From positions 1 to 64,000 of IMG/VR virus record IMGVR_UViG_3300032245_001860: a DNA stretch of 64,000 nucleotides; one strand, written 5' to 3'. The position numbers and the translations under genes are program-made. The notes under the pieces were generated by a model that saw only the letters and a list, made by a program, of their open reading frames with translations, ran no database searches and was not told the origin of the DNA. Every line of letters begins with the position of its first letter. Position 1 is the stretch's first letter. Below, piece after piece: positions 8,316 to 47,680 of this stretch.

Positions 8316-8383
8316 TGGTGGATAGCTTAAGTAGAGCAGAGGAACATAAGCCTTTGATATGGGTGCAAATCCCATTCCACCTT
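8316..8383 (+). tRNA. Degenerate tRNA-like element, CAT anticodon
   Basis: GGTGGA/TCCACC acceptor, ATGGG-TGCAAAT-CCCAT T arm, irregular anticodon arm. Confidence 0.5.
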
Positions 8384-9071: not shown

Positions 9072-9230
9072 TTCTAAAGGGGAGAGTAAAATCTCCCCTT
9101 TTTTATTTGTCATGGCAAGCTGGGGTGATAATATTATCACCCCAAAAGAGAACAAATAATTTTAATTTTTTGTACCTAATTCTTTTACCAATCTCTTGCA
9201 AGTTATACTACATTATGTTATTATTAGTCA

Positions 9231-9802: not shown

Positions 9803-10644
9803 TTGACTATAATAGTATTGCAGTTCGCTGTAATACTATTTTTTTATAGGTATGTAATGAAGAAGATTCATATTTCCAATTTCAGGAAGAAGCATGGTGT
9901 AGAGTTGTTTGCACAAGTGTCAGAAGCAGTCAAGAAGTCTAACTGCGATAGTCATGTAATGAAGAATTCCTTTGTAAACATTTCAAAGATTATTCAACAG
10001 CTACCAGAAAATGAAATCAAAACCAAGTTTGTGAATTGGGCCTCAGGTTATGATTTCGCTGTTATTGATGTAGTGTAATTTATTTACAAGATCTTCATGG
10101 GGTGGTAAGATTACCACCCCATTTTTCTATGTCAAATAAATTTTTATGTGATACAATGTGCTATGAACAAACTTATGCATCTTACCAGTGAATTAGATTC
10201 GCACATCAGTATGGTTGATTTTTTTGAAACCCTTGAGAAATGTCATGAGTATGGCAAAGTGATAGTTCAAGACAAGCAAGGACAAAATTATAAAATTCAT
10301 TCTGTACAGGAAGATGACAATCTCAATACTATCTTGATGATAGTACCAGAGTATAATCCAGATGAAGATGAAGATTGGGAAGAATGAAACCTATTACAAT
10401 AAGAAAAACATTAGCCAGATTTGCTTTTTATGCAAGTGAAATTAAATCAGGTAAAGAACATAAGATGATATTGGAATCTATGGATTTTACTGAAGATGAT
10501 TTCCAATATATGATAGAGCAATCATTGAAAATCGCTAACAGTGATGATTATGATTTAGATGTTGTTCTCACTGACCACACGCACAAAAGTCCTATTGGTG
10601 GATGTTATATTTCAAAAGATGGTACCAATCTTGCATGGTTGTAA
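9803..10644 (+). CDS. Three small hypothetical genes (ending 10078, 10387 and 10644)
   Basis: Co-oriented ORFs with sigma70-like promoters; true starts likely downstream of the ORF-track starts. Confidence 0.55.
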
Positions 10645-10664
10645 TTTTTGTGTATAAAAAATTC

Positions 10665-10760
10665 AACGCAGATGACATTCCCCTTTCTTCATCTGCCAGT
10701 GTTGTACAGGTCTGCAACACAACAAAACAGGCAAGAATCCTCCACTTGCCTGTTTTTATT
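10665..10760 (+). ncRNA. Putative three-hairpin small RNA with anti-SD loops
   Basis: Promoter TTGCAT-N16-TATAAA (10631-10658); hairpins GCAGATGA/TCATCTGC (loop CATTCCCCTTTCT), GTGTTG/CAACAC, and terminator AAAACAGGCAAG/CTTGCCTGTTTT (loop AATCCTCCA). Confidence 0.6.
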
Positions 10761-10794
10761 TGACTATTCCAGTATACAACGATATAATGGTTAT

Positions 10795-11190
10795 ATGAAA
10801 ATCGCTATTAGTGCTTTTTCCAATCAAGAAGACTTGACTGCATTTTTTGTCATTGATTGCAGTAACAGTTTGCATTTAGACTTGGAAGATTTTATCTCTA
10901 ATCATAAATCTGAAGAATTTATGTCTTTCAAAACTGATGATGTTTATTTAATTACCGGAACATATCATTATCTGAGAAAAAAAGTAAGTTTTTCTGAAAT
11001 CTTTAAAAATCAATACACAAACAAAGTGACTGATTTCAATTATTCAAAGAAGCAACCTGAATCAATCAAGATTTATGCAAATCGTTTTTTGTGCTATTTT
11101 TATGCTGAAAAAGATGGCATTGTATACCAATCTCATGATATGACAGTAGATATAGTTAAAGATTGGTGCAAGGAGTTAGTAGTTGTCTGA
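10795..11190 (+). CDS. Hypothetical protein (leaderless start)
   Basis: ATG 6 nt after TATAAT (10783-10788); the ORF-track extension to 10648 runs through a terminator. Confidence 0.65.
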   Translation: MKIAISAFSNQEDLTAFFVIDCSNSLHLDLEDFISNHKSEEFMSFKTDDVYLITGTYHYLRKKVSFSEIFKNQYTNKVTDFNYSKKQPESIKIYANRFLCYFYAEKDGIVYQSHDMTVDIVKDWCKELVVV

Positions 11191-11512
11191 CCAAGTATGG
11201 ATTTATTTTTCAAAGACTGGCACAGGATATGAAATCAAAGGTTCTGATGCTATTTCTGGATTTGATGCATTTATAAACATGGATGGTACATATCTTGTTG
11301 AGTATTGCTATTCTGACTTGAAAGACTCAATGCATTTCTTTATCTATGAATGGGATAATTCTCAAAAGAAACGCAGAACAGTTTTTGAGGGATATCAAAG
11401 ACAAAACATCCTTGTGAACTTTGCCAAGAATGTTCATGTTTGTCATAATGTTAGACAAGCAATCTACAAAGAATACATGATGGATTTGGAAGAACAAGAT
11501 GCAAACTCGTGA
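11183..11512 (+). CDS. Hypothetical protein
   Basis: AAGGAG RBS, TTG start, coupled to neighbours. Confidence 0.6.
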   Translation: MSDQVWIYFSKTGTGYEIKGSDAISGFDAFINMDGTYLVEYCYSDLKDSMHFFIYEWDNSQKKRRTVFEGYQRQNILVNFAKNVHVCHNVRQAIYKEYMMDLEEQDANS

Positions 11513-12670: not shown

Positions 12671-12774
12671 TGGGGTGATAATATTATCACCCCAAGATCC
12701 TTTTAGCAAATAATTAATTTTTCTTGCATCAGTATACCATTTGTGATATAAAAGAGTATCGAAAGGTTACTACA

Positions 12775-13450: not shown

Positions 13451-13587
13451 TCACATCCCTTGGCTTTTGTCAAGGGATATTTTTTATTTGTCAAGCTCTC
13501 CCTTGGGGTGGTAATCTTACCACCCCATTTTATTTTGTCAAATAAATTAATTTTTGTTGCAAGGTTAGTATATTGTGATATACTTTT

Positions 13588-34140: not shown

Positions 34141-37134
34141 ATGAAAAAATTAAGTTATAGAATTGTAATATCTGGTATCAAAGAAGATATTGAAGCGCTT
34201 TGCAAACATATTGGCTTTACTGATCCTGAATATATAAAAGTTGTTAGGCAAAAAGTTGATGACTACAAAGGTTATCAAGTTTTTGCTGCTTGGTTATATA
34301 TTAGGGATGTTGAACCTGAATCATATGTTGTTGCATTGAATAAATATGTTAAAGCCAGACAATTAGATCCTTCAAAAATAAAAGTCACTAAAGATGCTGT
34401 TTCTATTAATGACAATGTTTTTAAGGATAAAATTGAGCTTACTGAATATATCCATTCTACATTCCCCATTATGCAAGTTGAGCAAAAAAAAGATAATGAG
34501 GAAGTAAAAAGCGAAGATCCAGTAATTGTCAACAAAGATAATTCTATAAAAATATATGAAGTTAATAGTGCAGATGATGGTAGAAGATTAGTTGGTGATG
34601 ACACTTCTTGGTGTATTGGGTACAAAGGCCCAAGTAATATGTGGCAGGGTTATAGAGACACCAAAGAATCTTCATTTTTTATTGTTTTTGATAATAATCC
34701 TCCTACTCCTGATCAAAGAAAAGTTGCGATTGATTTTACTTTTAGAGGTGTAGAACTTACTGATATACCTAATCGCACAGGTACACAATTGACTAATGGT
34801 ATGGATTGGGATGCTTATTCTAATTATCTTAAAAGTAGAGGGATTAATTTAGAAGCAAAAAGAGTTAATCCTAATACTGGTCAAGAAGAAAAGATACTTC
34901 AAAATAAACCTGTATCTCCTGAAGAAAAAATTCAAAAAGCAACATTTTCTACTGTAAATATGACTTCTGCCAGAATATTAGAAAAAAATACTGTTATGTT
35001 ATGGCAGTCTGGTAAATGCGAAATATATACGGGTACTCTTAACAGAAATTTTTTAGTTGAGCACGTTTTTCCTAAAGACCCAAAACAAACTTATCTTCAA
35101 TATCCTGATGACCGCACTGATTTTTTGATTACTATTGACAATCCAGATGCTATTTATTACACAGCAAGATGGATGTCTCAAGGAAAACCATTTACAGATG
35201 AAATATTAACATTTCTTATGAAATCTGTTGGTGGTGAAGATGTTTTATCAAAATTCTTAAACTCTGGCGCTGAAGTTCAAGACTCTCAATACAAAATTAT
35301 AAGAGAAAATAAAAGCTTATGGAAAACATACATAAGAACACAAATAATTAAGGCTGAGCAAACTGGGTACTATACACTTCCTTTTGAATATTTCAAAGAC
35401 TTAATGAATTCTGGCAACGATAAACTGATTACATATTATTTATCACTTGGCCTTAATGCAAGCCGAGAATTTGATGTCAAATTATTAAGAGATGAATTTC
35501 CAAATTACCTAAAATTATTATTGATGAGTTCGATGGGAGAAAATAAATCAAATCAATTTGCTCCATCAGTGCAACAAATAATAGTTGATACAAAAGATAA
35601 AGAAATTATTCAAAAATTTGTTCAAGTAGCAACAAATGTAACACCAGATATTGCCTCACAAATACAATCTGATCCAGAATTGTTTTTATTTTATAGTAAA
35701 GCTAATTTGGCGAAACCAGGCAGGAATGCATTTTTTGGTGAATTGGGCAATAAAATGGTTGATGCTGTTTTGAGATCTGGTGATAGAGAAGCAGTAAAAA
35801 AGGCAGCTCTTGGTAGGGGCTTTGAATATCGTGATTTTGCCCTGGCTAAAGAAATGGGTGTTTATGATGAAGCAAAGTTATCCATTTTAAATCCTAATAC
35901 TGTTGATCCAGATATATATCAATTATATGATCCTTCCAATCCTTATGATGTGTCATTAGTAGAGCAAATTCAAGATGTAAATGTTTTATCTTATTTGCAT
36001 CCTGAGTGGAGATCAAATTCAAAAGTTTCGATGGCTAATGCAATAATTAATTTTGAAAATAGACCTCATTCTCAAGAAAAACCAATACCTGATTCTGTTT
36101 ATGAACTAATGTTATATTTGATCAATGACAGTGATTATATGGCTTTTATAAGTCAATATGAATTAAGCGAAAGTGAACAAAATAAACTCAAATCTCTTTA
36201 TTCAGAATTGCAAAATTCATTAAAAAATCCAGAATTTGTAAAAACCTTTTTTACCAATTTCCAATTGATTAAGGGCAATACTCCTGGAATCAGTAGAATG
36301 TTTTCAATGATATATAATAATGTATCCGATGTTTTAAATATTCTACCGAGTGAAGCTTTATCAATTCCAGAAGTAAAAGAATATATTGAAGAGTATATAG
36401 AAGATATTAAATTTGAAAGTCTTTTAAAACATATTGATGTACCTTGGTTGTATGAAGAATTTGTGGAAAGTTGCGCTAAAGACCAAGACTTCTTAAGGCA
36501 AAAATTTAATGATTTTTACAATAAAGACAAAGAATTTGCTTTCCATTTTTTAGGTGATTGTTTTGAAAAACAAAAACCAGATTTAGGTTATTTTATTGCT
36601 ATTCCAGTGAACGTAAAAATTAAGGTAGCTTCTATTTATTTTGAAATTTATCCTGACGAAAAAGAAAGTGAAGAGACCTTAAAAAATAATTTTTTTGATT
36701 CTTTACTGATGAATAAAGGAAATAGAAGTTCTATCACTGAACAGCTTTACATATTAAGAAATTTTCCTAAATTATTCTATTATAAAATAGTACATGGTCT
36801 TCTTATGTTAAGATACATTTATCCAGAAATAAGATCTGCATTAAGACAAATGTATCCTAATATAGCCAATTTAATTCTTCAATATGAAACTGAAACAAAA
36901 TATGGAAGTGATTATTTTGATGAAAATACTGAAGAAGTAATGAGAGGGAAAAGACCAGATGAAGTTGAACCAGAACAACAAGATACATTCTATGATGGTC
37001 CCTCTGAAGAAGATTGGCCAAAGCAAGCTTCAATAAAACTTATGGTAAAAGTTGCCCAAAAACTTGATTTAAAAAAGAAATATAAGTTAGCAGATAAGTT
37101 TACAAATATATTGAGAAAATACAATGTTCAATAA
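34141..37134 (+). CDS. Large paralogous protein 1 (TxWCI domain, C-terminal tag)
   Basis: GDDTSWCIGYKGPSNMW..Y; C-terminal MVKVAQKLDLKKKYKLADKFT. Confidence 0.8.
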   Translation: MKKLSYRIVISGIKEDIEALCKHIGFTDPEYIKVVRQKVDDYKGYQVFAAWLYIRDVEPESYVVALNKYVKARQLDPSKIKVTKDAVSINDNVFKDKIELTEYIHSTFPIMQVEQKKDNEEVKSEDPVIVNKDNSIKIYEVNSADDGRRLVGDDTSWCIGYKGPSNMWQGYRDTKESSFFIVFDNNPPTPDQRKVAIDFTFRGVELTDIPNRTGTQLTNGMDWDAYSNYLKSRGINLEAKRVNPNTGQEEKILQNKPVSPEEKIQKATFSTVNMTSARILEKNTVMLWQSGKCEIYTGTLNRNFLVEHVFPKDPKQTYLQYPDDRTDFLITIDNPDAIYYTARWMSQGKPFTDEILTFLMKSVGGEDVLSKFLNSGAEVQDSQYKIIRENKSLWKTYIRTQIIKAEQTGYYTLPFEYFKDLMNSGNDKLITYYLSLGLNASREFDVKLLRDEFPNYLKLLLMSSMGENKSNQFAPSVQQIIVDTKDKEIIQKFVQVATNVTPDIASQIQSDPELFLFYSKANLAKPGRNAFFGELGNKMVDAVLRSGDREAVKKAALGRGFEYRDFALAKEMGVYDEAKLSILNPNTVDPDIYQLYDPSNPYDVSLVEQIQDVNVLSYLHPEWRSNSKVSMANAIINFENRPHSQEKPIPDSVYELMLYLINDSDYMAFISQYELSESEQNKLKSLYSELQNSLKNPEFVKTFFTNFQLIKGNTPGISRMFSMIYNNVSDVLNILPSEALSIPEVKEYIEEYIEDIKFESLLKHIDVPWLYEEFVESCAKDQDFLRQKFNDFYNKDKEFAFHFLGDCFEKQKPDLGYFIAIPVNVKIKVASIYFEIYPDEKESEETLKNNFFDSLLMNKGNRSSITEQLYILRNFPKLFYYKIVHGLLMLRYIYPEIRSALRQMYPNIANLILQYETETKYGSDYFDENTEEVMRGKRPDEVEPEQQDTFYDGPSEEDWPKQASIKLMVKVAQKLDLKKKYKLADKFTNILRKYNVQ

Positions 37135-39853
37135 TCGTATAGTAGTTGCGCAAGCTGAATTATTAAGACAAATCTTTCTTGCCAAAGAAAAAGATTATAG
37201 TGAGTTTAGAGATTTAGTTCAATCATATCAAGGCCCATATAAACTTTTGTCTGCTTGGTTATTTGCAAGAGATTTTCAAAAACCTCAAGTGGATGATATT
37301 GTTAGACATTTAGATCCATATATCAGAAAAGGTCATTTGAAGCCTGGTGAAATAAATGTTTCACCTAATGCAGTAAAAATCAGAGACAGTCAAGCTTTTG
37401 AGGAAATAGTTCCTTTCACAGATTATATTCATGCGCAATTTCCAGTAGCAACAAAAGAATCTAAAGAACCTGTAAAACAACAAGTTGAAGATATTCCTGT
37501 AGCCACCGGAGATGGAATAAAAATATATCAAATCAATAGTGCAGATGATGGAAGAAGATTAGTTGGCGGCGATACAAAATGGTGTATTGGTTATCCTGGT
37601 CCTAATAATATGTGGCCTCATTATAGACAAAATCAAGCTTCCACATTTTTTGTTGTATATGATGAAAATCCTCCAACTTCTGATCAAAGAAAAGTAGCTA
37701 TTGATTTTACTAAAAATGATATTCTATTAACAGATATACCTAACACAACTGGACATCAATTGTCTAATGGTATGGACTGGGAAGATTATTCTAAATATCT
37801 TATGAAAAAGGGCGTAAATTTAGATGCTACAAGAATAAACCCTGAAACCAATGAAGAAGAAAAGATTTTTCAAAATAAACCAGTTACACCACAAGAAAAA
37901 TTAGTAACTACTTTATTTAATTTGACAAGAAATCAAAGTAAATATCAACCCAATTTAGGTCTTACTCCAGAAGATATAAAAATGTGGTCTACTGGTAAGT
38001 TTCAAATAAGATCTGATATGGAAAACCAAACTGTCATTCAAGCAGATGATAATGATCCAAATTATTTTTATTTTAGAAAAAATTCCAGATCAACTCCAAT
38101 AAATCTTCCAACAGAAGAAGAAATTCCTGGCATAAGCATTTCAAAAGAGCCTATGGATAATCCTTCAGGTGATGGAAGAACCCTATATAGTTCTATCACC
38201 ATAAATACAGATGAAACAAAAACATTTCTATCAAAATTTATTGGTATGGGATGGATTTTACCAGATCCAATATTTGATTATGTTATTGATTTACCTGATG
38301 GCAAAGATATCATAATTCAATATATAGACACAGGATTAAAACTTCCAAAACAGCAACTGGACAAAATAAAAAATGTACCAAGTTTCATAAAAAGCTATGT
38401 TCGTAAACAACTTCAAGCTGTAGAAAGAGCTGGTTCTACAGATTTAGAATTTTTAGAATTTGCAGATCCAAATGACCTAAAAATCAGAAATCAAGTTTTA
38501 GACGCACTTTATTCAAGATATGAAAATCAATCATATGACGATATGAATATTTTCTTTGAAAATACTCCATTAGAATGGTACAAAATACCTCAAATAGGTT
38601 TATTCTTAACAGATAAAACTGATTATATTGATTTCAATGATGAGTTAGCTATAAAAGTTGCCCTTGCTAAAGGTATGTGGTTTTATCTTAATGAAAATCC
38701 AACACTTGAAAATGCTCTAATATATTTGCATGATTTAAATGCTATAAATTCATTTAAAGACAAAGCAATAGCAGAAAAATATCATCCAACATTTTTTGAA
38801 GCTCCTTATTTTTTAGGAGTATGGAAAAAATTGTGGGATAAAGTTCCTGATTCTTTAAAAAAACTTCCTGAACTAAATCAATATAAAGCAGTGGGTGAAT
38901 TTGAACCATATGGTGGTTTACATCTTGAGCAACCATATCCCGGCGATGACATTGAATTATTATATGAAACAGCTGCAATTAATATTTTGGCTGGTAATGC
39001 ACAAAGAACTTATTTATATAAAAATAAACCTGAATTTTGGATGTATTTAATAAAGAATTTTAACAAATTGATGGAAGGTGTTTTCAGGAATATTAATTAT
39101 ATAACTCTTGAATCTGAAACTGATGAAGATGGCAATGATACTGAAACTAAAACTTATAGTAGACATGATCAAAGAGAAAAATTTTTAAAGTATTTTTCTT
39201 ATGCTTTGTCAACTAATATTTTAAGTAATCCTGAAATCATATCAGCTATAAAAGACAATTTTAAGGAAAATGAAACAGATTATATATTATCTGGTTTTAT
39301 GAATGTTCCACAAGTATTAGATTATTTCGTTGAAAAAATAAATACTTTTTCAGATGCATATCAAATAGCTGATTTTAGGTTTTCAAATTTATTTATGAAA
39401 GAAAACCCTATTTTAAGAAAAATTACACAAAATGGTTTTGATGTTGATAATTTCTTAAATGTTACATTTCAGCCTTTGCATCTTATTTATAATGCATACA
39501 AATGGTATCCAGAAATAATTGATAAGATTAGCGATGAAGGTTTCCTTAAAATTTTAAAATCTCCAAGAGACAGTACTATTGCAAGAGAATATTTCAGTTT
39601 CTTGCTTGAAAAAAGACCTAATGTTATATGGACTTTATTTGAAGAAGGTTCAAGAATATTTACCTACGAGCAAAGAGTTTTCCTGACACAAAAGAAAAAA
39701 GAAATGTCTCAACAACCACAAGAACCAATTGAAGAAGAACCTACTACAGCTTTTGTAAAATCAATAGTGAAGGTGGCTAATAAACTTGACAGCAAAAATA
39801 AATACAAGTTAGCGGACAAGTTTACAAATATCTTGAGAAAATACAATGTTTAA
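37124..39853 (+). CDS. Large paralogous protein 2
   Basis: GGDTKWCIGYPGPNNMW..Y; C-terminal IVKVANKLDSKNKYKLADKFT. Confidence 0.8.
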   Translation: MFNNRIVVAQAELLRQIFLAKEKDYSEFRDLVQSYQGPYKLLSAWLFARDFQKPQVDDIVRHLDPYIRKGHLKPGEINVSPNAVKIRDSQAFEEIVPFTDYIHAQFPVATKESKEPVKQQVEDIPVATGDGIKIYQINSADDGRRLVGGDTKWCIGYPGPNNMWPHYRQNQASTFFVVYDENPPTSDQRKVAIDFTKNDILLTDIPNTTGHQLSNGMDWEDYSKYLMKKGVNLDATRINPETNEEEKIFQNKPVTPQEKLVTTLFNLTRNQSKYQPNLGLTPEDIKMWSTGKFQIRSDMENQTVIQADDNDPNYFYFRKNSRSTPINLPTEEEIPGISISKEPMDNPSGDGRTLYSSITINTDETKTFLSKFIGMGWILPDPIFDYVIDLPDGKDIIIQYIDTGLKLPKQQLDKIKNVPSFIKSYVRKQLQAVERAGSTDLEFLEFADPNDLKIRNQVLDALYSRYENQSYDDMNIFFENTPLEWYKIPQIGLFLTDKTDYIDFNDELAIKVALAKGMWFYLNENPTLENALIYLHDLNAINSFKDKAIAEKYHPTFFEAPYFLGVWKKLWDKVPDSLKKLPELNQYKAVGEFEPYGGLHLEQPYPGDDIELLYETAAINILAGNAQRTYLYKNKPEFWMYLIKNFNKLMEGVFRNINYITLESETDEDGNDTETKTYSRHDQREKFLKYFSYALSTNILSNPEIISAIKDNFKENETDYILSGFMNVPQVLDYFVEKINTFSDAYQIADFRFSNLFMKENPILRKITQNGFDVDNFLNVTFQPLHLIYNAYKWYPEIIDKISDEGFLKILKSPRDSTIAREYFSFLLEKRPNVIWTLFEEGSRIFTYEQRVFLTQKKKEMSQQPQEPIEEEPTTAFVKSIVKVANKLDSKNKYKLADKFTNILRKYNV

Positions 39854-42563
39854 TTATCGCATAGTAGTAGCAAATAAAGATTTATTCATTTCAATCTTTA
39901 GATCTGTTGGTAAAGATTACAACAACTATAAAGAAACAATTAATAACTATAATTCTGTTTTCAAATCTATTGCTGCTTGGATGCTTGCAAGAGACTCCAA
40001 TGAATTTGCAATTAACGATATAGTTAGCCATCTTACCGAATATATAAATCGTAAAAAATTAAACCCTGCTAATATCAAAGTATCTATAGCTAATATTGTA
40101 ATTAATGACAAATCTATTCCTGATTTAGAAGAATTATTCAACTATGTCCATGCCACCTTTCCAATAGTAAAGAAACAAGAAGAACAACCAGCTGAAGAAA
40201 TAATAGAACGTACTCCTATTCTCACTGGCGATGGAATACAGATATTCAAAGTAGATAGGGCTCAAGATAGTAAAGAACTTGCAGCTGATACTTCTTGGTG
40301 CATAGCTTATAAAGGCCCAAATAATATGTGGCAAAGCTATAGGAGTAACCAAGCTGCTACTTTCTTCATTGTATGGGATGAAAATCCACCAACACCTAAT
40401 CAAAGAAAAGTGGCTTTGCAATATAATAAAAATAATGTCCAAATCACTGATATTGTAAACAGAACAGGTTTTAATTTAACTAACGACATTACTTTTGAAT
40501 ATCAAGGACAAACTATTACAGGCAGAGATATACCTACTTATCTTACATATTTGAAAAGTAAGGGAGTGGATATTGATGCCACAACTATTAACCCTGAAAC
40601 TGGCCAAGAAGAAAAAATACTTAAAAACAAACCTATCACTCCTGAAGAAGCAATGGAGACAGAGATTGGCGCATATGTAAGATATAATTCTTCAGATATT
40701 AGTGTTGATAATATTAAAAGTTGGGCTACAGGAGAGTTTACTCTTACCATTCCTCAAGGTTTCATCAACAAAGTCCGTGATGGAGAATATCAAGTTTTTA
40801 CTAAAGATAATTACTCTGGAAGAAGTTTTAAAGTTCCTTATGATTTTGTAACTGAAGAAATACCATTTGATGATCACCCCCGGAACGCTTTACCTTTGCC
40901 ATTAAAATCCGTCACTTTTGAATCAGAAAATATAAAAACATACCTTGCCAAATTCATCGGAATGGGATGGATTATGTCTGATGAAATTGTAGATTATTTG
41001 ATGGAAGTTCCTGGTGGTAAAGATTACTTAATTCAATATGTAAATACTGGCTTACAATTACCTAAAAGTCAAGTTGATAAATTAAGCACTAATAAACAAC
41101 TTTTTAATTCCTATTTGAAACAACAACTGACAGCATTCGAATTAGGGCACAACAATGGAGAGTTTTTACAATATATTGATACTGATAATGAAGAAGTAAA
41201 AAATAAAATTCTTGAAAGATATAAGAAAAATTCATTTATCAATATTCCCTTAAAATGGCTTAAAGTATTACCACAAATAGGTGTTTTTAAGTTTACAGGT
41301 CCTAACTTTGATTTTGGAGATGAATTTATAAATCAATTGGCTATTTCTCATGGTAATACTGACATTTATGAACAATTTCCAACTCTTGAAAATACAAAAA
41401 TTTTACTTCAATTTCCTGAAGCAATTGATAAACTAAAACCAAGAGCTGAAGCAGAAGGATATTCTTCAAATGTATTTAGTGAGATTGATCAATTAAGTGA
41501 TTGGACTGTTAGATGGAAATCCGTGCCAGAAATATTTCACGACAATCCTGAATTTCAAATATATAAATCCGCTGCTTTAGCTGGTCAAAATTCATATGAC
41601 AGAATGGATCTCAAGAAACACGAAGGTAATAATCCAGATGATTTCTTATATTACACAATTCTTTTGATGAATGATGAAATACAACATGAAGAAAAAAATT
41701 CTCCGATAATCAAAAACCCTGAATTTTGGAAATTTGCAATTAATAACTTTGATCATTTGATAGATACAGTATTTAAAAAAATCAAAATATGGCATAGAGA
41801 TTTACCTGATAATTTTGATGAAGATAATGATGACGAAGAAAATTTTGATGAAATAGAAGACAAAGATAAACAAAGGGTAGAACTTGCTGGTTTCTTAAAA
41901 AATATGCCACCTGAAATATTCTTCTCCCCTGAAATGGTTGAATTGATCAAGAGCAAGTTTGACCTTGAAATAATAAACAATGCATTAGTAAACTATTTGC
42001 AAAAAGGTTGGAATCTTGACGCATTTTCAGCATACATAAAAGATTTTGCTGATTTAGCTCAGTTTTCTAATTATGGATTTATATTTTTTACTCATCCAAA
42101 TAATTTAATTAAAACATTAGTGAGAGATCATTACGATGAACAAAAATTCTTATATGCTTTGAGTAATTTAGCTGGCTTTAAATCAAGTGTTTTTGTAGAA
42201 CTTACTAAATGGCTTCCAGAATTATTTCTAAAAGTATCTGATGAAGCAATATTGAAAATGCTTACCAATATTCGTGGCACAATACCAAGAGAATTTTTAG
42301 ATCATATCTTAGAATATAAACCAGATTTCATAAAAAAATATTCTGATCGATTAATACCTAAAATGCATTCACAAGATGTATGGTATTATCTTACTGAAGA
42401 ATTGAGAAAACAACAAGAAGAAGCAGATAAAACAATTGAAGAAGAAGATAAGTTTGCTTCTGTAAAAATTATGGTGAAAGTGGCACAAAAGCTTGATATT
42501 AAAAAGAAATATGAGTTAGCAGATAAACTAACTCATATTCTAAAGGTAAAAACCTCTCAATAG
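39846..42563 (+). CDS. Large paralogous protein 3
   Basis: ADTSWCIAYKGPNNMW..Y; C-terminal MVKVAQKLDIKKKYELADKLT. Confidence 0.8.
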   Translation: MFNYRIVVANKDLFISIFRSVGKDYNNYKETINNYNSVFKSIAAWMLARDSNEFAINDIVSHLTEYINRKKLNPANIKVSIANIVINDKSIPDLEELFNYVHATFPIVKKQEEQPAEEIIERTPILTGDGIQIFKVDRAQDSKELAADTSWCIAYKGPNNMWQSYRSNQAATFFIVWDENPPTPNQRKVALQYNKNNVQITDIVNRTGFNLTNDITFEYQGQTITGRDIPTYLTYLKSKGVDIDATTINPETGQEEKILKNKPITPEEAMETEIGAYVRYNSSDISVDNIKSWATGEFTLTIPQGFINKVRDGEYQVFTKDNYSGRSFKVPYDFVTEEIPFDDHPRNALPLPLKSVTFESENIKTYLAKFIGMGWIMSDEIVDYLMEVPGGKDYLIQYVNTGLQLPKSQVDKLSTNKQLFNSYLKQQLTAFELGHNNGEFLQYIDTDNEEVKNKILERYKKNSFINIPLKWLKVLPQIGVFKFTGPNFDFGDEFINQLAISHGNTDIYEQFPTLENTKILLQFPEAIDKLKPRAEAEGYSSNVFSEIDQLSDWTVRWKSVPEIFHDNPEFQIYKSAALAGQNSYDRMDLKKHEGNNPDDFLYYTILLMNDEIQHEEKNSPIIKNPEFWKFAINNFDHLIDTVFKKIKIWHRDLPDNFDEDNDDEENFDEIEDKDKQRVELAGFLKNMPPEIFFSPEMVELIKSKFDLEIINNALVNYLQKGWNLDAFSAYIKDFADLAQFSNYGFIFFTHPNNLIKTLVRDHYDEQKFLYALSNLAGFKSSVFVELTKWLPELFLKVSDEAILKMLTNIRGTIPREFLDHILEYKPDFIKKYSDRLIPKMHSQDVWYYLTEELRKQQEEADKTIEEEDKFASVKIMVKVAQKLDIKKKYELADKLTHILKVKTSQ

Positions 42564-44134: not shown

Positions 44135-45868
44135 TTAGTTTCCTTTTTTATAGTTTTTATTATTATACACACCTGCATAGGCCCAATTTTCATCTTTATC
44201 AGTCATTGGCCTTTCAGTGAGCTTGTCTATTGTTTGATTGTTATTTTCTTCTATTTCGTGTTTAGGAGCAAATAATCTTAATTGTGATCTGTTATTTTCT
44301 ATTTGTTTTTCATGAAGATCAAGAAGTGGTTGTGTTTTTAAGAACGGGATTATTTCATCATCACTGTAGAAATTTTTTCTATATCCACTTGGTATTCTAA
44401 AATCATTGCCTGTCTTTTCTTTATATTGAAATGCAAATTTACTTTTCTCAAAGAAATTTTCTATTTTATTTGCCACTAAAAAATAAAGATATTCAGGTTG
44501 TTTTTGATACCAAGACATGAATGGTTCTTTTGATTCTGAATCTTTATATTTTTCTTTTGCTTCTTCAAACTTTTTTGTAGCTGTTTCAAGTACACCATTG
44601 ACATCTAAATATCTTTCAAAATTGTGTGTAGTAAATGATTTTTTTAATGCTAATTCTGCTTTGTGTTCTAATGCAGTGTAGAAAGTGTTAGCGTAATCAT
44701 CAAGAGGATAATCTTCTATTGTATATGCTTCATTATCCCAATTAAATGCACTACCTGATCTTTGTAATCCATCATGCATTTCACTAATTGCAGCATCTAT
44801 AATATCTGGAATATGTGAGCCATAAAGATTTGATTCAGCGAATTGTTCATGATTCCAAACAGGAGATATAATTCCAAATCTGTTAAAATCTTCTGTTACA
44901 TCATCATCAATAGCATCATATTCTGATTCATCTGGGCCATAAATAGATTCTGTTATAGCGTATCCAATTTGATCAGGTTCATATGTCCAATAAATTCTTT
45001 CTTGCCAATCTTCAAAATGATCAGCTACAGGATTTATATTAGATTGTTTTTTGATATCTTCTCTGTCGTCAAAAAATTCTCTAATTTTTTCCACTAAATC
45101 ATCATCTTCAACTTTAGCATTATTTGGGCCCTTGATTTGAATTACTTTATCACCTTGTATTTCAATTGTTGCTTTAGGTTGATTTTGTGGATCTCTTAAG
45201 GAATAGATTCTTGAATGTCCTCTTCTCACTGCATCCCAATATCCAGCAACACAGTGATGCATTTTTGCACCTTCAACATCAAGATCATTTTCTGATTTGA
45301 CATTTACCATATTCCAACCATCAGGATATGCCATTACTACTTCTCGGTCAGCTGGATTGTAAAATTTACCTCCACCTTTACCTATAAGTATTTGCTCCCA
45401 TTCATCTGTGTCTTCAACCACTTGTTCCCAGGACTTCAATCCAAGATTATAATCAGGGTCATTTGTTTCAATATTGTTGACAAAATCTTGCATATGGAGA
45501 GCTTGTTCTAAAAAATTAGCATGCTCACCATTCATACCACCTGAAGGAATATTATGATCATATTCACCATTAGGTTTTTGAGGTTGTATTCTCCAGCCTT
45601 TTAATTTATGAAATAACCAGTTTTTAAATCTTTCATTTGTGAAGTTGTCTAATATGAATTTTTCTTCTCTTGTTGGTCTATTTTGACTTGAAAGATTTTC
45701 TAATTCTTGCAATGTGATATTTGGATTTTGTTTGATTGCGCCTAACATTTTACCTTTGGCAGCATTATCAAATTTGGGGTCAGAAAAAACAGCTAAAATA
45801 GATTCATTTATGCCTTGAGTTCTAAGCTTTTCTACTTCATCTTGTAAACTTGCAAATCTGTACCACAT
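44135..45868 (-). CDS. PcfJ-like domain protein with MWYR N-terminus
   Basis: LDVEGAKMHHCVAGY...IYSLRD..QPKATIEI...QIKGPNN. Confidence 0.78.
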   Translation of the reverse strand: MWYRFASLQDEVEKLRTQGINESILAVFSDPKFDNAAKGKMLGAIKQNPNITLQELENLSSQNRPTREEKFILDNFTNERFKNWLFHKLKGWRIQPQKPNGEYDHNIPSGGMNGEHANFLEQALHMQDFVNNIETNDPDYNLGLKSWEQVVEDTDEWEQILIGKGGGKFYNPADREVVMAYPDGWNMVNVKSENDLDVEGAKMHHCVAGYWDAVRRGHSRIYSLRDPQNQPKATIEIQGDKVIQIKGPNNAKVEDDDLVEKIREFFDDREDIKKQSNINPVADHFEDWQERIYWTYEPDQIGYAITESIYGPDESEYDAIDDDVTEDFNRFGIISPVWNHEQFAESNLYGSHIPDIIDAAISEMHDGLQRSGSAFNWDNEAYTIEDYPLDDYANTFYTALEHKAELALKKSFTTHNFERYLDVNGVLETATKKFEEAKEKYKDSESKEPFMSWYQKQPEYLYFLVANKIENFFEKSKFAFQYKEKTGNDFRIPSGYRKNFYSDDEIIPFLKTQPLLDLHEKQIENNRSQLRLFAPKHEIEENNNQTIDKLTERPMTDKDENWAYAGVYNNKNYKKGN

Positions 45869-45871
45869 AGT

Positions 45872-47680
45872 TTAAGCCTTGTTCGCCAATCTAAATCTTT
45901 TATTATTGAATGAATATCTCCACTCATTCACGCCTTCAGTAAATAATTTTTGCTGTTGTCTTCTACTTAAGAAATCTTGGTAATAATCTTCTGTTCCTCT
46001 ATACAATGCTTCACTTGGAGTAACTGGTGAAACATCTAAATTAATAGATAGTTTATTTGCAATATCATAAAACTCTTTTGGCATATTGTTTCTTATATAG
46101 GTATACAAAGCTCTATAAAAATAAACAGGATAAACATCATAAATATTTTCATATTCTTTGAGTTGATGATAACCTCTTGAATCTGGCCTCTCATATGGTT
46201 GATTTGCTAATTCATTTATTTCATCATCACTCATATTTTCAAGATTTAATTTGACAGGTTTGTTTCCAGGATTAAATTCTTCACTTACTGCTGCTTCTTT
46301 ATAATCTCTAATTTTTTCTAATTCTTCTGAGAGAGCTTCTTTGTATTTATGTCTTATATCATCTATATTAAGACCGCTTATTATAATTTCTCTGTTTGTT
46401 CCTAAAGTACCAACTTGAGATGCATAGTCCTTAATTTTTTCTAAATCTTTACGAATATACATATCGCCAAGTAAAGAAATTAATTCATCAAATCTATCAT
46501 CATCAGGTATTTCTTGATAAGTTTTATAATAACCAGCATTATCTACCCCGACTTGACTGATTAAATATTCAACTGGCAAGTCTCTGTAAAGGTCATCATA
46601 ATCTCTTTCAATTGGCCTGTAACGAACACCCAATTCGTCAGTCATTGTTTCATCATTTTCAGGATTTAAATAATCTGCAATTGCATACAAAGCATCTTGT
46701 TCAGACATATTCTGATTCAGGTTCAGGTCTTCATTGAGATCATGTTTAGAATAAAAATTATTTTGTTCAATCCAGTAAAGAGCTAATTTTTTATACTCTG
46801 GTTTGGGTGGTTTATTGCCTTTGCCTTGAATTTGCTTTACTTTGTCAGGCAATCCTATTTCTATAGTAACATGTGGTTTGTTTGATTCATCTCTTAAAGA
46901 ATAAGTGTCGCTAATGCCTTGTTCATATAAGCCATGGTAATTATTTGTGCCTGTACAGTGACCCATATTTTGACCTTCAGCATCAAAATCTCTTTCTTGG
47001 GTAAGTTTGACCATCATCCAATCATTGTATTCTTCAGGTAATCCTAAAGATTTAACTGTCTGTGCATCAAAAATCATTACTACATTTGGGTCAACTATTT
47101 TGCCATTTTCTTTCTTGATTTTAGAATATGTTGCACCTGGTTCTTGATTACTTAATTCTTCATGCCATATTTCACTGGCTCTACTTGCTTGATCTAAATT
47201 CATAGAAAAAATATTGAATCTTGGGTTTTCACTTACATATTCAACATACCAATCTAAAATATGATAAAGCTCATTTGTAACACCGATAATTGGTCCTATA
47301 GCAATATGTGAAAATTTAGGATAACTGAATTTTTCTGGGTCATGTTGATTTGGTCTGTAAGAAGGTAAAGCTACTCTTTCAACCCATTTATAAAAATTAG
47401 CTTTTTGTTCTTCGGAAATATTCATTCCTGATAATCTTGTGTCTAAATCTGCTAATAATCTTAATTCGTCATTAGATACTTTTTGTAATTGATTAGTTTG
47501 GAATTTGCCTTGTAATTCATCCCAAGGCATAAGAGGATTTTGCATCAAGGCTCCAATATATTTACCTCTTAATGGTATATCGGTCATTGCTTGTAGGTTA
47601 TCAATTGTGTCATCGCTTACACCTTTAGATTTAAGTGTTTCAAAAGCTCGTTCTACGTTTTGTGCAAGTCTATACCACAT
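45872..47680 (-). CDS. PcfJ-like domain protein (paralogue) with MWYR N-terminus
   Basis: EGQNMGHCTG...YSLRDESNKPHVTIEI...QIQGKGN. Confidence 0.78.
   Translation of the reverse strand: MWYRLAQNVERAFETLKSKGVSDDTIDNLQAMTDIPLRGKYIGALMQNPLMPWDELQGKFQTNQLQKVSNDELRLLADLDTRLSGMNISEEQKANFYKWVERVALPSYRPNQHDPEKFSYPKFSHIAIGPIIGVTNELYHILDWYVEYVSENPRFNIFSMNLDQASRASEIWHEELSNQEPGATYSKIKKENGKIVDPNVVMIFDAQTVKSLGLPEEYNDWMMVKLTQERDFDAEGQNMGHCTGTNNYHGLYEQGISDTYSLRDESNKPHVTIEIGLPDKVKQIQGKGNKPPKPEYKKLALYWIEQNNFYSKHDLNEDLNLNQNMSEQDALYAIADYLNPENDETMTDELGVRYRPIERDYDDLYRDLPVEYLISQVGVDNAGYYKTYQEIPDDDRFDELISLLGDMYIRKDLEKIKDYASQVGTLGTNREIIISGLNIDDIRHKYKEALSEELEKIRDYKEAAVSEEFNPGNKPVKLNLENMSDDEINELANQPYERPDSRGYHQLKEYENIYDVYPVYFYRALYTYIRNNMPKEFYDIANKLSINLDVSPVTPSEALYRGTEDYYQDFLSRRQQQKLFTEGVNEWRYSFNNKRFRLANKA

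What the first reader, a model, noticed from the sequence alone, without database searches (positions are those of the whole stretch)
10631..10760. Three-hairpin small RNA with anti-RBS loops hidden under a mis-extended ORF
Seen: it has its own promoter and terminator. Loop 1, CATTCCCCTTTCT, is the complement of AGAAAGGGGAATG, and the terminator loop AATCCTCCA is the complement of TGGAGGATT. Inference: a translation-blocking sRNA.
Basis: partly seen in the sequence, partly recalled or inferred. Interest (0 to 1): 0.7.

Follow-up and report, generated by a model that had tools for sequence, protein, structure and literature searches.

The report
Conserved small RNA in jumbo phage
A roughly 93-base non-coding RNA gene in the early region of an uncultured freshwater jumbo phage keeps its hairpins and two C-rich loops across related phages, so it is most likely a phage regulatory RNA that pairs with ribosome-binding sites, though no expression data exist.

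Summary
Window 10665-10757 (+) folds into three hairpins (-35.1 kcal/mol, z = -7.4).

The window is the first 64 kb of a 316-kb IMG/VR jumbo-phage record from freshwater.

I recovered 15 distinct homologues of the element from metagenomes. All lie just after homologues of one 86-aa gene, which are 48-100% identical as proteins.
- 99.5% of base-pair cells stay paired, and 11 of 27 pairs show compensatory double changes.
- 27 G-U cells fit only the + strand RNA.
- Loop 1 always keeps a C-rich core (CCCCUU; CCCUUU in three). CCUCCA in the terminator loop never changes.
- The -10 box and the first bases of the RNA are conserved. The -35 TTGCAT matches this phage's own early-promoter consensus.
- Stops and frameshifts in relatives rule out the ORF extension 10648-10794.

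No Rfam family matches, and the genome holds a single copy. The element is 92-95% identical where the neighbouring gene is 77-79%.

Best reading: a new phage sRNA family, placed like a 3'UTR-derived sRNA, that works like the C-rich anti-Shine-Dalgarno sRNAs (RsaE, LhrC, RNAIII).

Expression, targets and host are untested. No RNA run was listed, and no phage mRNA stands out as a target.

The parts
10631..10636 (+). Putative -35 hexamer TTGCAT, inside the last codons of the upstream 86-aa gene
   Evidence: It matches this phage's early-promoter -35 consensus TTGCA[AT]. 16 of the 25 genome-wide TTGCA[AT]-N15-17-TATA[ACT][AT] sites lie in the first 29 kb, against 9.6 expected genome-wide. It is not conserved in all relatives: TTGCTT, TCGCTT and TAGCTT also occur.
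10651..10658 (+). -10 box TGTATAAA (TATAAA at 10653-10658)
   Evidence: It is invariant in 13 relatives and is TGTACAAT in the most distant clade, with the same 4-nt spacing to TCAACGCA. It lies after the stop codon, so coding does not constrain it. The same nGTATAA[AT] box sits 6-7 nt before the ATG of about 21 leaderless genes in this genome.
10663..10671 (+). Conserved TCAACGCAG block (last base T in the most distant clade) holding the predicted transcription start (A10665/A10666) and the base of hairpin 1
   Evidence: TCAACGCA is invariant in all 15 homologues. The start is inferred from the 12-13 nt distance between the TATAA box and the start in the leaderless class. It has not been mapped.
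10668..10696 (+). Hairpin 1: 8-bp stem, 13-nt loop CAUUCCCCUUUCU (10676-10688)
   Evidence: Hairpin energy -9.0 kcal/mol; loop 98% unpaired. 4 of 8 pairs show compensatory double changes and 100% of cells are paired. Every variant keeps a C-rich core: CCCCUU in 12, CCCUUU in L040 and the L070 clade.
10699..10720 (+). Hairpin 2: 8-bp stem, loop CAGGUC. Dispensable, because it is absent in the L028/L029/L043 clade
   Evidence: Hairpin energy -7.8 kcal/mol. The stem sequence is wholly replaced but still a hairpin in L070/L071, with 4 pairs showing double changes. It is missing in three relatives.
10724..10757 (+). Hairpin 3: intrinsic terminator with a 9-12-bp stem, 9-nt loop AAUCCUCCA (10736-10744) and a U-run
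   Evidence: Hairpin energy -15.1 kcal/mol. 3 pairs show compensatory double changes, and the loop core CCUCCA is invariant in all 15. It is the only one of 125 terminator-like hairpins in the genome whose loop holds CCTCC or CCCC. Synteny breaks right after it in some relatives.
10384..10644 (+). Upstream 86-aa gene of unknown function. The RNA follows its homologue in every case found
   Evidence: 44 homologues were found. The RNA follows the gene in four different downstream contexts. One relative, L073, has the gene with a plain terminator and no RNA. The fold is uninformative.
10648..10794 (+). Spurious N-terminal extension of the downstream ORF (TTG 10648); not coding
   Evidence: In relatives, in-frame stops lie 9-84 nt upstream of the real ATG, and 1-2-nt indels fall inside the element.
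10760..11190 (+). Next transcription unit: promoter TTGACT-17-TATAAT (10760-10788) and the leaderless 131-aa gene from ATG 10795
   Evidence: The promoter scores 11 of 12. The 6-nt gap between the -10 box and the ATG is kept in relatives while its sequence varies. In other relatives the gene is replaced by unrelated genes.

Best explanation
Window 10665-10757 (+) encodes a non-coding RNA of about 93 nt in the early region of an uncultured freshwater jumbo phage.

Proposed transcription (inferred). The RNA starts from a promoter of the phage's own early type, with -35 TTGCAT inside the end of the upstream 86-aa gene and -10 TGTATAAA. Transcription begins at about A10665 and ends at the intrinsic terminator formed by hairpin 3. 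Read-through from the 86-aa gene ends at the same terminator. The RNA is therefore placed like a 3'UTR-derived sRNA with an internal promoter.

Proposed mechanism (inferred). The RNA displays two invariant, fully exposed C-rich apical loops: CCCCUU in hairpin 1 and CCUCCA in the terminator hairpin. The most likely action is that these loops pair with G-rich Shine-Dalgarno regions (AAGGGG, GGAGG) of host or phage mRNAs. This would block 30S binding, as the UCCC/C-rich sRNAs RsaE, LhrC and RNAIII do.

Shown here: the element is non-coding; the + strand RNA structure is under selection; the loop motifs, the -10 box and the 5' end are conserved.
Inferred: it accumulates as a discrete RNA, its start site, pairing with ribosome-binding sites, and the identity of its targets.
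For: - Structure. MFE -35.1 kcal/mol, z = -7.4. Loops are at least 98% unpaired.
- Family. 15 distinct homologues were recovered through homologues of the 86-aa gene that are 48-100% identical as proteins.
- Covariation. 99.5% of 367 pair cells are standard pairs. 11 of 27 pairs have changes on both sides. The covariation score is 0.268 against 0.114 for shuffles (0 of 500 as high). Slid controls give only 29-49% pairing.
- Strand. 27 cells are G-U, which would be A-C mismatches on the other strand, so the + strand RNA is the selected form.
- Loops. Loop 1 keeps a C-rich core in every variant (CCCCUU in 12, CCCUUU in three) and CCUCCA never changes, while stems, linkers and loop flanks vary.
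- Conservation. The element is 92-95% identical where the adjacent 86-aa gene is 77-79%.
- Promoter. The -10 box is invariant, or replaced by a consensus-keeping variant (TATAAA to TACAAT) with the same spacing. The -35 fits the phage's early promoter class.
- Terminator. It is the only one of 125 terminator-like hairpins with a CCTCC/CCCC loop; most have 4-nt loops.
- Modularity. One relative has the gene with a plain terminator instead of the RNA. Downstream genes differ in four ways.
- Not coding.
- Shine-Dalgarno use. GAGG, GGAG and AAGGGG are enriched upstream of this phage's genes.
- Precedent. Unpaired C-rich motifs, including a terminator loop, bind Shine-Dalgarno regions in RsaE, RNAIII and LhrC (PMC2790875, PMC4132741).
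Against: - No RNA evidence exists: no RNA run was listed.
- The -35 hexamer is degraded in several relatives (TCGCTT, TAGCTT), so independent transcription may be weak there.
- A terminator is needed here anyway for the upstream gene.
- No phage translation-initiation region binds the loops better than random windows. The 1st percentile is -13.6 for initiation regions against -13.3 kcal/mol for background. No target is conserved in neighbouring genes.
- The compensatory changes come from about three lineages, and the alignment was fitted to the model.
- In the closest relatives the element is no more conserved than its flanks.
- The host is unknown.
Confidence: 0.55

Rival explanations
1. The element is only the 3' untranslated region and terminator of the 86-aa gene's mRNA. 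The hairpins would act in cis to protect the mRNA from 3' exonucleases or to set termination efficiency, and no separate RNA would have trans targets.
For: No terminator separates the gene's stop codon (10642-10644) from the element, so read-through must end at hairpin 3. The element always follows this gene. The -35 is not conserved everywhere. Hairpin 3 shares the T-run plus ATTTG[TA]C tail of other + strand terminators in the region.
Against: A plain 4-nt-loop terminator does the job in relative L073 and in most of the 125 terminators of this genome. Cis stabilisation does not explain the invariant C-rich loop sequences. It also does not explain an invariant -10 box with fixed spacing to a conserved 5' block lying outside the coding sequence.
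Confidence: 0.22
2. The RNA is a decoy or a binding platform rather than an antisense regulator. Its exposed loops resemble the anti-Shine-Dalgarno end of 16S rRNA. They could bind a protein (for example the co-inherited 86-aa protein or a host RNA-binding protein) or sponge a G-rich host RNA.
For: The linkage with the 86-aa gene is strict. Two loop motifs are invariant without any identifiable mRNA target in the phage.
Against: The 86-aa protein has no recognisable RNA-binding fold. The model has pLDDT 69, and the best Foldseek hits are weak helix-turn-helix-like bundles with E > 0.3. The complex prediction was not run by the tool. C-rich loops of this kind are a documented base-pairing signature (PMC2790875).
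Confidence: 0.12
3. The element acts in cis at the level of transcription, for example as a put-like antitermination RNA or as an attenuator controlling read-through into the downstream gene.
For: It is a promoter-proximal pair of hairpins followed by a terminator in an early operon region.
Against: The downstream gene has its own strong promoter and is leaderless. Downstream genes differ among relatives. Hairpin 2 is dispensable. No alternative antiterminator fold is evident, since the MFE structure makes up 40% of the ensemble. No Rfam cis-regulatory family matches.
Confidence: 0.04
4. The region is protein-coding, either as the N-terminal extension of the 131-aa gene (TTG 10648) or as the 53-aa ORF 10602-10763.
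For: Open frames exist in the window itself.
Against: In relatives, in-frame stops lie 9-84 nt upstream of ATG 10795 and 1-2-nt indels fall within the element. Substitutions follow base-pairing, not codons. In some relatives the downstream gene is replaced altogether.
Confidence: 0.01

Closest known systems
RsaE / RoxS (Bacillales sRNA with C-rich motifs; PMC2790875, PMC6158497)
   Same: It is about 100 nt long, with a 5' hairpin plus a stable terminator. It carries several conserved unpaired C-rich motifs of the CCCCUUU type that pair with Shine-Dalgarno regions and block initiation. It occurs in low-GC genomes.
   Different: No Rfam family, RsaE included, matched at E <= 10, so there is no detectable homology. 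RsaE is a chromosomal bacterial gene, not a phage gene. Here one motif sits in the terminator loop, and targets and host are unknown.
LhrC of Listeria monocytogenes (PMC4132741)
   Same: It is a small two-hairpin sRNA whose CU-rich UCCC motifs in loop A and in the terminator loop both bind the G-rich Shine-Dalgarno region of lapB. This is the direct precedent for a terminator loop acting as a seed.
   Different: LhrC is multicopy and bacterial, and its motif is CUCCC...UUUU. The phage RNA is single-copy, has CCCCUU and CCUCCA, and has no tested target.
Staphylococcus aureus RNAIII 3' domain hairpins (PMC2790875, PMC2837412)
   Same: C-rich apical loops of several hairpins, the terminator hairpin included (the last point from my own knowledge), pair with Shine-Dalgarno sequences of target mRNAs by loop-loop contacts.
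   Different: RNAIII is 514 nt, encodes delta-haemolysin and is a quorum-sensing effector. The similarity is one of mechanism only.
3'UTR-derived sRNAs with an internal promoter (for example DapZ, MicL; my own knowledge, not checked here)
   Same: The promoter overlaps the end of the upstream coding sequence, and the sRNA shares the mRNA's terminator.
   Different: Those are Hfq-dependent enterobacterial sRNAs with single-stranded seeds. The promoter's function is not shown here.
Phage-encoded sRNAs in general (review PMC12197685; phiKZ dRNA-seq PMC8244752)
   Same: These are regulatory RNAs encoded by phages. PMC8244752 notes that sRNAs have been predicted for only a few virulent phages.
   Different: Most characterised examples come from temperate phages and prophages of enterobacteria. 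None resembles this RNA in sequence or structure as far as Rfam shows.

Membership tests
C-rich (UCCC/CCCC) anti-Shine-Dalgarno sRNA class (RsaE, LhrC, RNAIII type; a functional class) | Conserved C-rich motif(s) in unpaired regions or apical loops | tested here: met
   Loop 1 keeps a C-rich core in all 15 homologues (CCCCUU in 12, CCCUUU in three), and CCUCCA in loop 3 is invariant. Loops are at least 98% unpaired.
C-rich (UCCC/CCCC) anti-Shine-Dalgarno sRNA class (RsaE, LhrC, RNAIII type; a functional class) | Discrete stable transcript with its own promoter and a Rho-independent terminator | tested here: inconclusive
   The promoter motif fits the phage's early class and the -10 box is conserved. 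The terminator is canonical. No RNA run was listed.
C-rich (UCCC/CCCC) anti-Shine-Dalgarno sRNA class (RsaE, LhrC, RNAIII type; a functional class) | Base-pairs with the Shine-Dalgarno or start region of target mRNAs and blocks initiation-complex formation | not testable with these tools
   Only duplex predictions are possible. The exact complement of loop 3 (UGGAGGAUU) is the Shine-Dalgarno region of genome gene 162207-162701(-). AAGGGG sites precede the DnaE gene and three other genes. None of these exceeds background.
RsaE (Rfam) or any other curated RNA family | Match to the family covariance model | tested here: not met
   At the gathering threshold only tRNAs are found in the window. At E <= 10 on 10600-10800 there are only spurious miRNA and plastid-UTR hits of 14-18 bits.
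3'UTR-derived sRNA with internal promoter | Lies at the 3' end of a protein gene, shares its terminator, and has a promoter overlapping the coding sequence | tested here: met
   The stop codon (10642-10644) lies inside the promoter spacer, and there is no terminator between the gene and the RNA. The arrangement is kept in all 15 homologues. This is positional evidence only.
Plain intrinsic terminator | A GC-rich stem and U-tract account for the whole conserved element | tested here: not met
   Hairpin 3 is a good terminator (-15.1 kcal/mol, T5). Hairpins 1 and 2, the -10 box and the loop sequences are conserved as well. Relative L073 uses a simple terminator without them.
Protein-coding sequence | Reading frame preserved among relatives | tested here: not met
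   Stops and frame-shifting indels occur in relatives.

The most novel reading that the evidence does not exclude
The RNA is a general anti-Shine-Dalgarno decoy. It displays two mimics of the 16S rRNA anti-Shine-Dalgarno sequence early in infection. By doing so it would mask Shine-Dalgarno-led (mainly host) mRNAs and shift ribosomes to the phage's many leaderless mRNAs. At least about 21 genes, many of them early, start 6-7 nt after a -10 box. This would be an RNA-based host translation shut-off.
Probability: 0.07. Interest if true: 0.85.

Novelty: new member of a known kind. Interest (0 to 1): 0.55.

Why it matters
Regulatory RNAs of virulent and jumbo phages are barely charted. PMC8244752 notes that sRNAs have been predicted for only a few virulent phages.

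This element is an sRNA family with no match in Rfam, and the comparative support is unusually clear for a metagenomic phage: covarying stems, invariant C-rich loops and a conserved promoter box. It also shows that a gene caller would bury the RNA under an extended ORF.

If the loops do pair with ribosome-binding sites, this would extend the C-rich anti-Shine-Dalgarno mechanism, so far shown mainly in low-GC Gram-positive bacteria, to huge phages. Together with the phage's many leaderless genes, it would give a testable idea of how such phages bias translation.

Tried and rejected
1. Cis-pairing of hairpin 1 with the start region of the upstream 86-aa gene. The predicted duplex is -18 to -23 kcal/mol in the window and in L027. 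In all other relatives, whose gene has its own leaderless promoter, it is only -3 to -13 kcal/mol. The match arises from a lineage-specific inserted 73-aa gene (10166-10387), so I rejected it as the conserved function.
2. Search for phage mRNA targets of loops 1 and 3 over 305 crude gene starts. The distribution barely differs from random windows. No target is conserved among neighbouring genes in six relatives.
3. Literal complement of loop 1 in the window. Only chance-level near-matches were found.
4. Rfam at gathering and at E <= 10. Nothing relevant.
5. Paralogues. Covariance model R1 finds one copy in the 316-kb genome.
6. Pattern scans of viral and metagenome contigs. They found one IMG/VR relative and two metagenome relatives; the other hits were chance matches in coding DNA.
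7. RNA-seq. No RNA run was listed. DNA runs gave variation only.
8. The 86-aa protein. No Pfam or PHROG hit. The model has pLDDT 69 and there is no significant fold match.
9. Protein-RNA complex prediction. The tool did not fold it, so it is not evidence either way.
10. Host or nearest cultured phage. The phage collection returned no nucleotide match to 10300-11200 (it may withhold the window's own record). DnaE and TerL have only remote hits, the best TerL hit being an uncultured 485-kb phage. The host was not identified.
11. A short ORF from ATG 10671 (at hairpin 1). It is not conserved: the ATG becomes GTG or is absent in relatives.

Full report
**What the window is.** The window is the first 64 kb of a 315,852-bp linear IMG/VR virus record, 88% complete by CheckV and 33% G+C. 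Near-identical or related DNA occurs in many freshwater and lake metagenomes. The genome encodes a DnaE-type Pol III alpha subunit, a class I ribonucleotide reductase, a large terminase and a Mu-like portal. Its nearest terminase is in an uncultured 485-kb phage, and no cultured relative or host could be named. The finding lies in a region dense in short genes, tRNAs, promoters and terminators. The scan found 15 terminator-like sites against 2.6 expected.

**The observation.**
- TTGCAT is at 10631-10636, then a 16-nt spacer, then TATAAA at 10653-10658.
- Hairpin 1 is 10668-10696 with the 13-nt loop CATTCCCCTTTCT (10676-10688).
- Hairpin 2 is 10699-10720.
- The terminator hairpin is 10724-10757 with loop AATCCTCCA (10736-10744) and a T-run.

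The fold is far better than chance (-35.1 kcal/mol, z = -7.4, none of 200 shuffles as good). All three loops are essentially always unpaired in the ensemble. The ORF listing gives a 180-aa ORF from TTG 10648. The real gene starts at ATG 10795, six bases after a TTGACT-17-TATAAT promoter, so it is leaderless.

**Relatives.** Exact-pattern scans found one IMG/VR relative and two metagenome relatives, all close; the other hits were chance. The productive route was the upstream 86-aa protein. It has 44 homologues down to 38% identity, and I fetched the DNA around 12 of them. In all, 15 distinct versions of the element were recovered. Each lies directly after a homologue of that gene that is 48-100% identical at the protein level.

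The downstream gene differs in at least four ways: a 131-aa gene, an unrelated 147-aa gene, a 501-aa HATPase_c_3 protein, or other sequence. In two DNA runs the synteny breaks exactly after the terminator, at 10756/10757. One relative (L073, protein 56% identical) has the gene followed by a plain 4-nt-loop terminator and no element. The element is therefore a separable module that travels with the 86-aa gene.

**It is an RNA structure under selection, on the + strand.** A covariance model built from nine sequences aligned all 15.
- 99.5% of 367 pair cells are standard pairs.
- 11 of 27 pairs have changes on both sides: 4 in hairpin 1, 4 in hairpin 2 and 3 in the terminator.
- The covariation score is 0.268 against 0.114 +/- 0.013 for shuffles (0 of 500 reach it).
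- Sliding the 3' partners by 1-3 columns drops pairing to 29-49%.
- In the most distant clade (L070/L071) the upper five pairs of hairpin 1 and almost the whole of hairpin 2 have different sequences yet still pair, and two pairs of the terminator stem are swapped.
- In the L028 clade hairpin 2 is absent, and hairpin 1 carries one deleted base on each arm.
- 27 cells are G-U pairs, which would be A-C mismatches in the complementary strand. The selected form is therefore the + strand RNA, not a DNA cruciform or an antisense transcript.

Two caveats apply. The alignment is fitted to the model, and the double changes come from about three lineages.

**What is conserved.** Loop 1 keeps a C-rich core in every version: CCCCUU in 12, and CCCUUU in L040 and the L070 clade. 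CCUCCA in the terminator loop is invariant in all 15, while loop flanks, linkers and stems vary. Further variants seen in eight metagenome runs fall at the same tolerated positions (10661/2, 10675, 10679, 10688, 10697, 10707, 10723/4).

Against moderately diverged relatives the element is 92-95% identical, while the adjacent 86-aa gene is 77-79% and the other neighbouring genes are 58-94%. Against the closest relatives it is no more conserved than its flanks.

Among 125 terminator-like hairpins in the genome, this is the only one whose loop contains CCTCC or CCCC. The usual loop is 4 nt.

**The promoter.** The generic scan missed it because TTGCAT matches TTGACA at only 3 of 6 positions. TTGCA[AT] is, however, this phage's own early -35. 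The pattern TTGCA[AT]-N15-17-TATA[ACT][AT] occurs 25 times in the genome (9.6 expected), and 16 of those lie in the first 29 kb, in front of genes. They often follow an A/T-rich GTCAAATAAATTAATTTTT box.

The -10 box TGTATAAA lies after the stop codon. It is invariant in 13 versions and becomes TGTACAAT in the most distant clade, with the same 4-nt spacing to the conserved TCAACGCA block. The same nGTATAA[AT] box sits 6-7 nt before the ATG of about 21 genes. That places the likely start at A10665/A10666 and gives an RNA of about 93 nt.

Against a strong independent promoter, the -35 is degraded to TCGCTT or TAGCTT in several relatives. No terminator separates the 86-aa gene from the element, so read-through transcripts must also carry it. 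The layout is that of a 3'UTR-derived sRNA with an internal promoter.

**Not coding.** In relatives the frame leading into ATG 10795 is closed by stops 9-84 nt upstream. Indels of 1-2 nt fall inside the element. The ATG at 10671 is GTG or absent elsewhere.

**Mechanism.** Both invariant loops are complementary to Shine-Dalgarno-type sequences: AAGGGG for loop 1 and GGAGG(A) for loop 3. Such motifs are enriched upstream of this phage's genes. GAGG occurs before 47 of 305 starts against 7 in random windows, and AAGGGG before 4 against 0.

Unpaired C-rich motifs are the documented signature of a class of sRNAs in low-GC bacteria that block initiation by binding the Shine-Dalgarno sequence; RsaE and RNAIII are examples (PMC2790875). 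In LhrC the terminator loop itself is one of the binding sites (PMC4132741). I therefore take loop-to-Shine-Dalgarno pairing as the most likely mechanism.

This is inference. Predicted duplexes with the 305 phage start regions are no stronger than with random windows, and no target is conserved among neighbouring genes. Candidate sites exist: the exact complement of loop 3 is the Shine-Dalgarno region of genome gene 162207-162701(-), and AAGGGG sites precede the DnaE gene and three others. The real targets may be host mRNAs, which cannot be examined without knowing the host.

The strongest single hit was hairpin 1 against the start region of its own upstream gene (-18 to -23 kcal/mol). It is confined to the two lineages that carry an inserted 73-aa gene and is absent elsewhere, so it is not the conserved function.

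**Comparison and novelty.** No Rfam family matches and the genome has one copy. Functionally the RNA resembles RsaE/RoxS, LhrC and the RNAIII 3' hairpins. Positionally it resembles 3'UTR-derived sRNAs. It is not a member of any of those families by sequence.

sRNAs of virulent phages are still few (PMC8244752; review PMC12197685). I class this as a new member (a new family) of a known kind.

My confidence by claim:
- about 0.9 that it is a conserved structured non-coding RNA element;
- about 0.65 that it accumulates as a discrete sRNA from its own promoter;
- about 0.45 that it acts by pairing with ribosome-binding sites.

The main rival is a purely cis-acting 3'UTR and terminator module.

**Limits.** No expression data exist: no RNA run was listed. 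The 86-aa protein gave no informative family or fold. The protein-RNA complex job was not folded by the tool and is not evidence.

Noticed in passing
window 1134-27222 (22 sites, e.g. 10099-10120, 12672-12693, 13505-13526): A palindromic hairpin family, GGGGTG[AG]T-N2-10-A[CT]CACCCC, occurs 22 times, all in the first 27 kb of the 316-kb genome. About 8 nt later it is usually followed by a GTCAAATAAATTAATTTTT box and a TTGCA[AT]-16-TGnTATA[AC]T promoter. Many copies lack a T-run, so they may be processing or protein-binding sites rather than simple terminators.
   Followed up: partly
whole genome; in the window e.g. ATG 10795, 10166, 15510(-), 49178, 49963, 60053(-): A large class of genes appears leaderless: a -10 box (nGTATAA[AT] or TATACT) ends 6-7 nt before the ATG. 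At least about 21 genes have TATAA at 12-13 nt from the ATG. Other genes have short leaders with GGAGG-type sites.
   Followed up: partly
window 10166-10387: A 73-aa gene (ORF-listing runs it from GTG 10148) is an insertion present only in this lineage and in L027. It removes the 86-aa gene's own leaderless promoter, so the two genes overlap at ATGA. Its 3' end is strongly complementary to hairpin 1 of the RNA.
   Followed up: yes
window 8316-8383: Rfam calls a fifth, weak tRNA (39 bits, shortened anticodon arm) directly before tRNA-Met. ARAGORN does not call it, so it may be a degenerate or unusual tRNA.
   Followed up: no
window 3240, 9076-9101, 13455-13478, 10724-10762: Intrinsic terminators on the + strand of the early region share a common tail, T5-7 ATTTG[TA]CA. 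The TTGACA/TTGTCA part can double as the -35 of the next promoter, as at 10760.
   Followed up: partly
genome G000 130575-132917 (outside the window; locus L053): The Mu-like portal protein carries a C-terminal DUF559 / REase_MTES_1575 endonuclease-like domain, an unusual fusion.
   Followed up: no
window 34141-42563 and 44135-47680: Three consecutive large ORFs (997, 909 and 905 aa; Pfam tested only on the first, no match) sit in a 29-30% G+C stretch. Nearby are two adjacent PcfJ-like proteins (577 and 602 aa).
   Followed up: no
run X9, contig piece matching window 10724-10757: One metagenome contig carries the terminator hairpin alone (34 nt, 2 differences) between unrelated flanks. This hints that the hairpin also occurs in another context in a related phage.
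   Followed up: no
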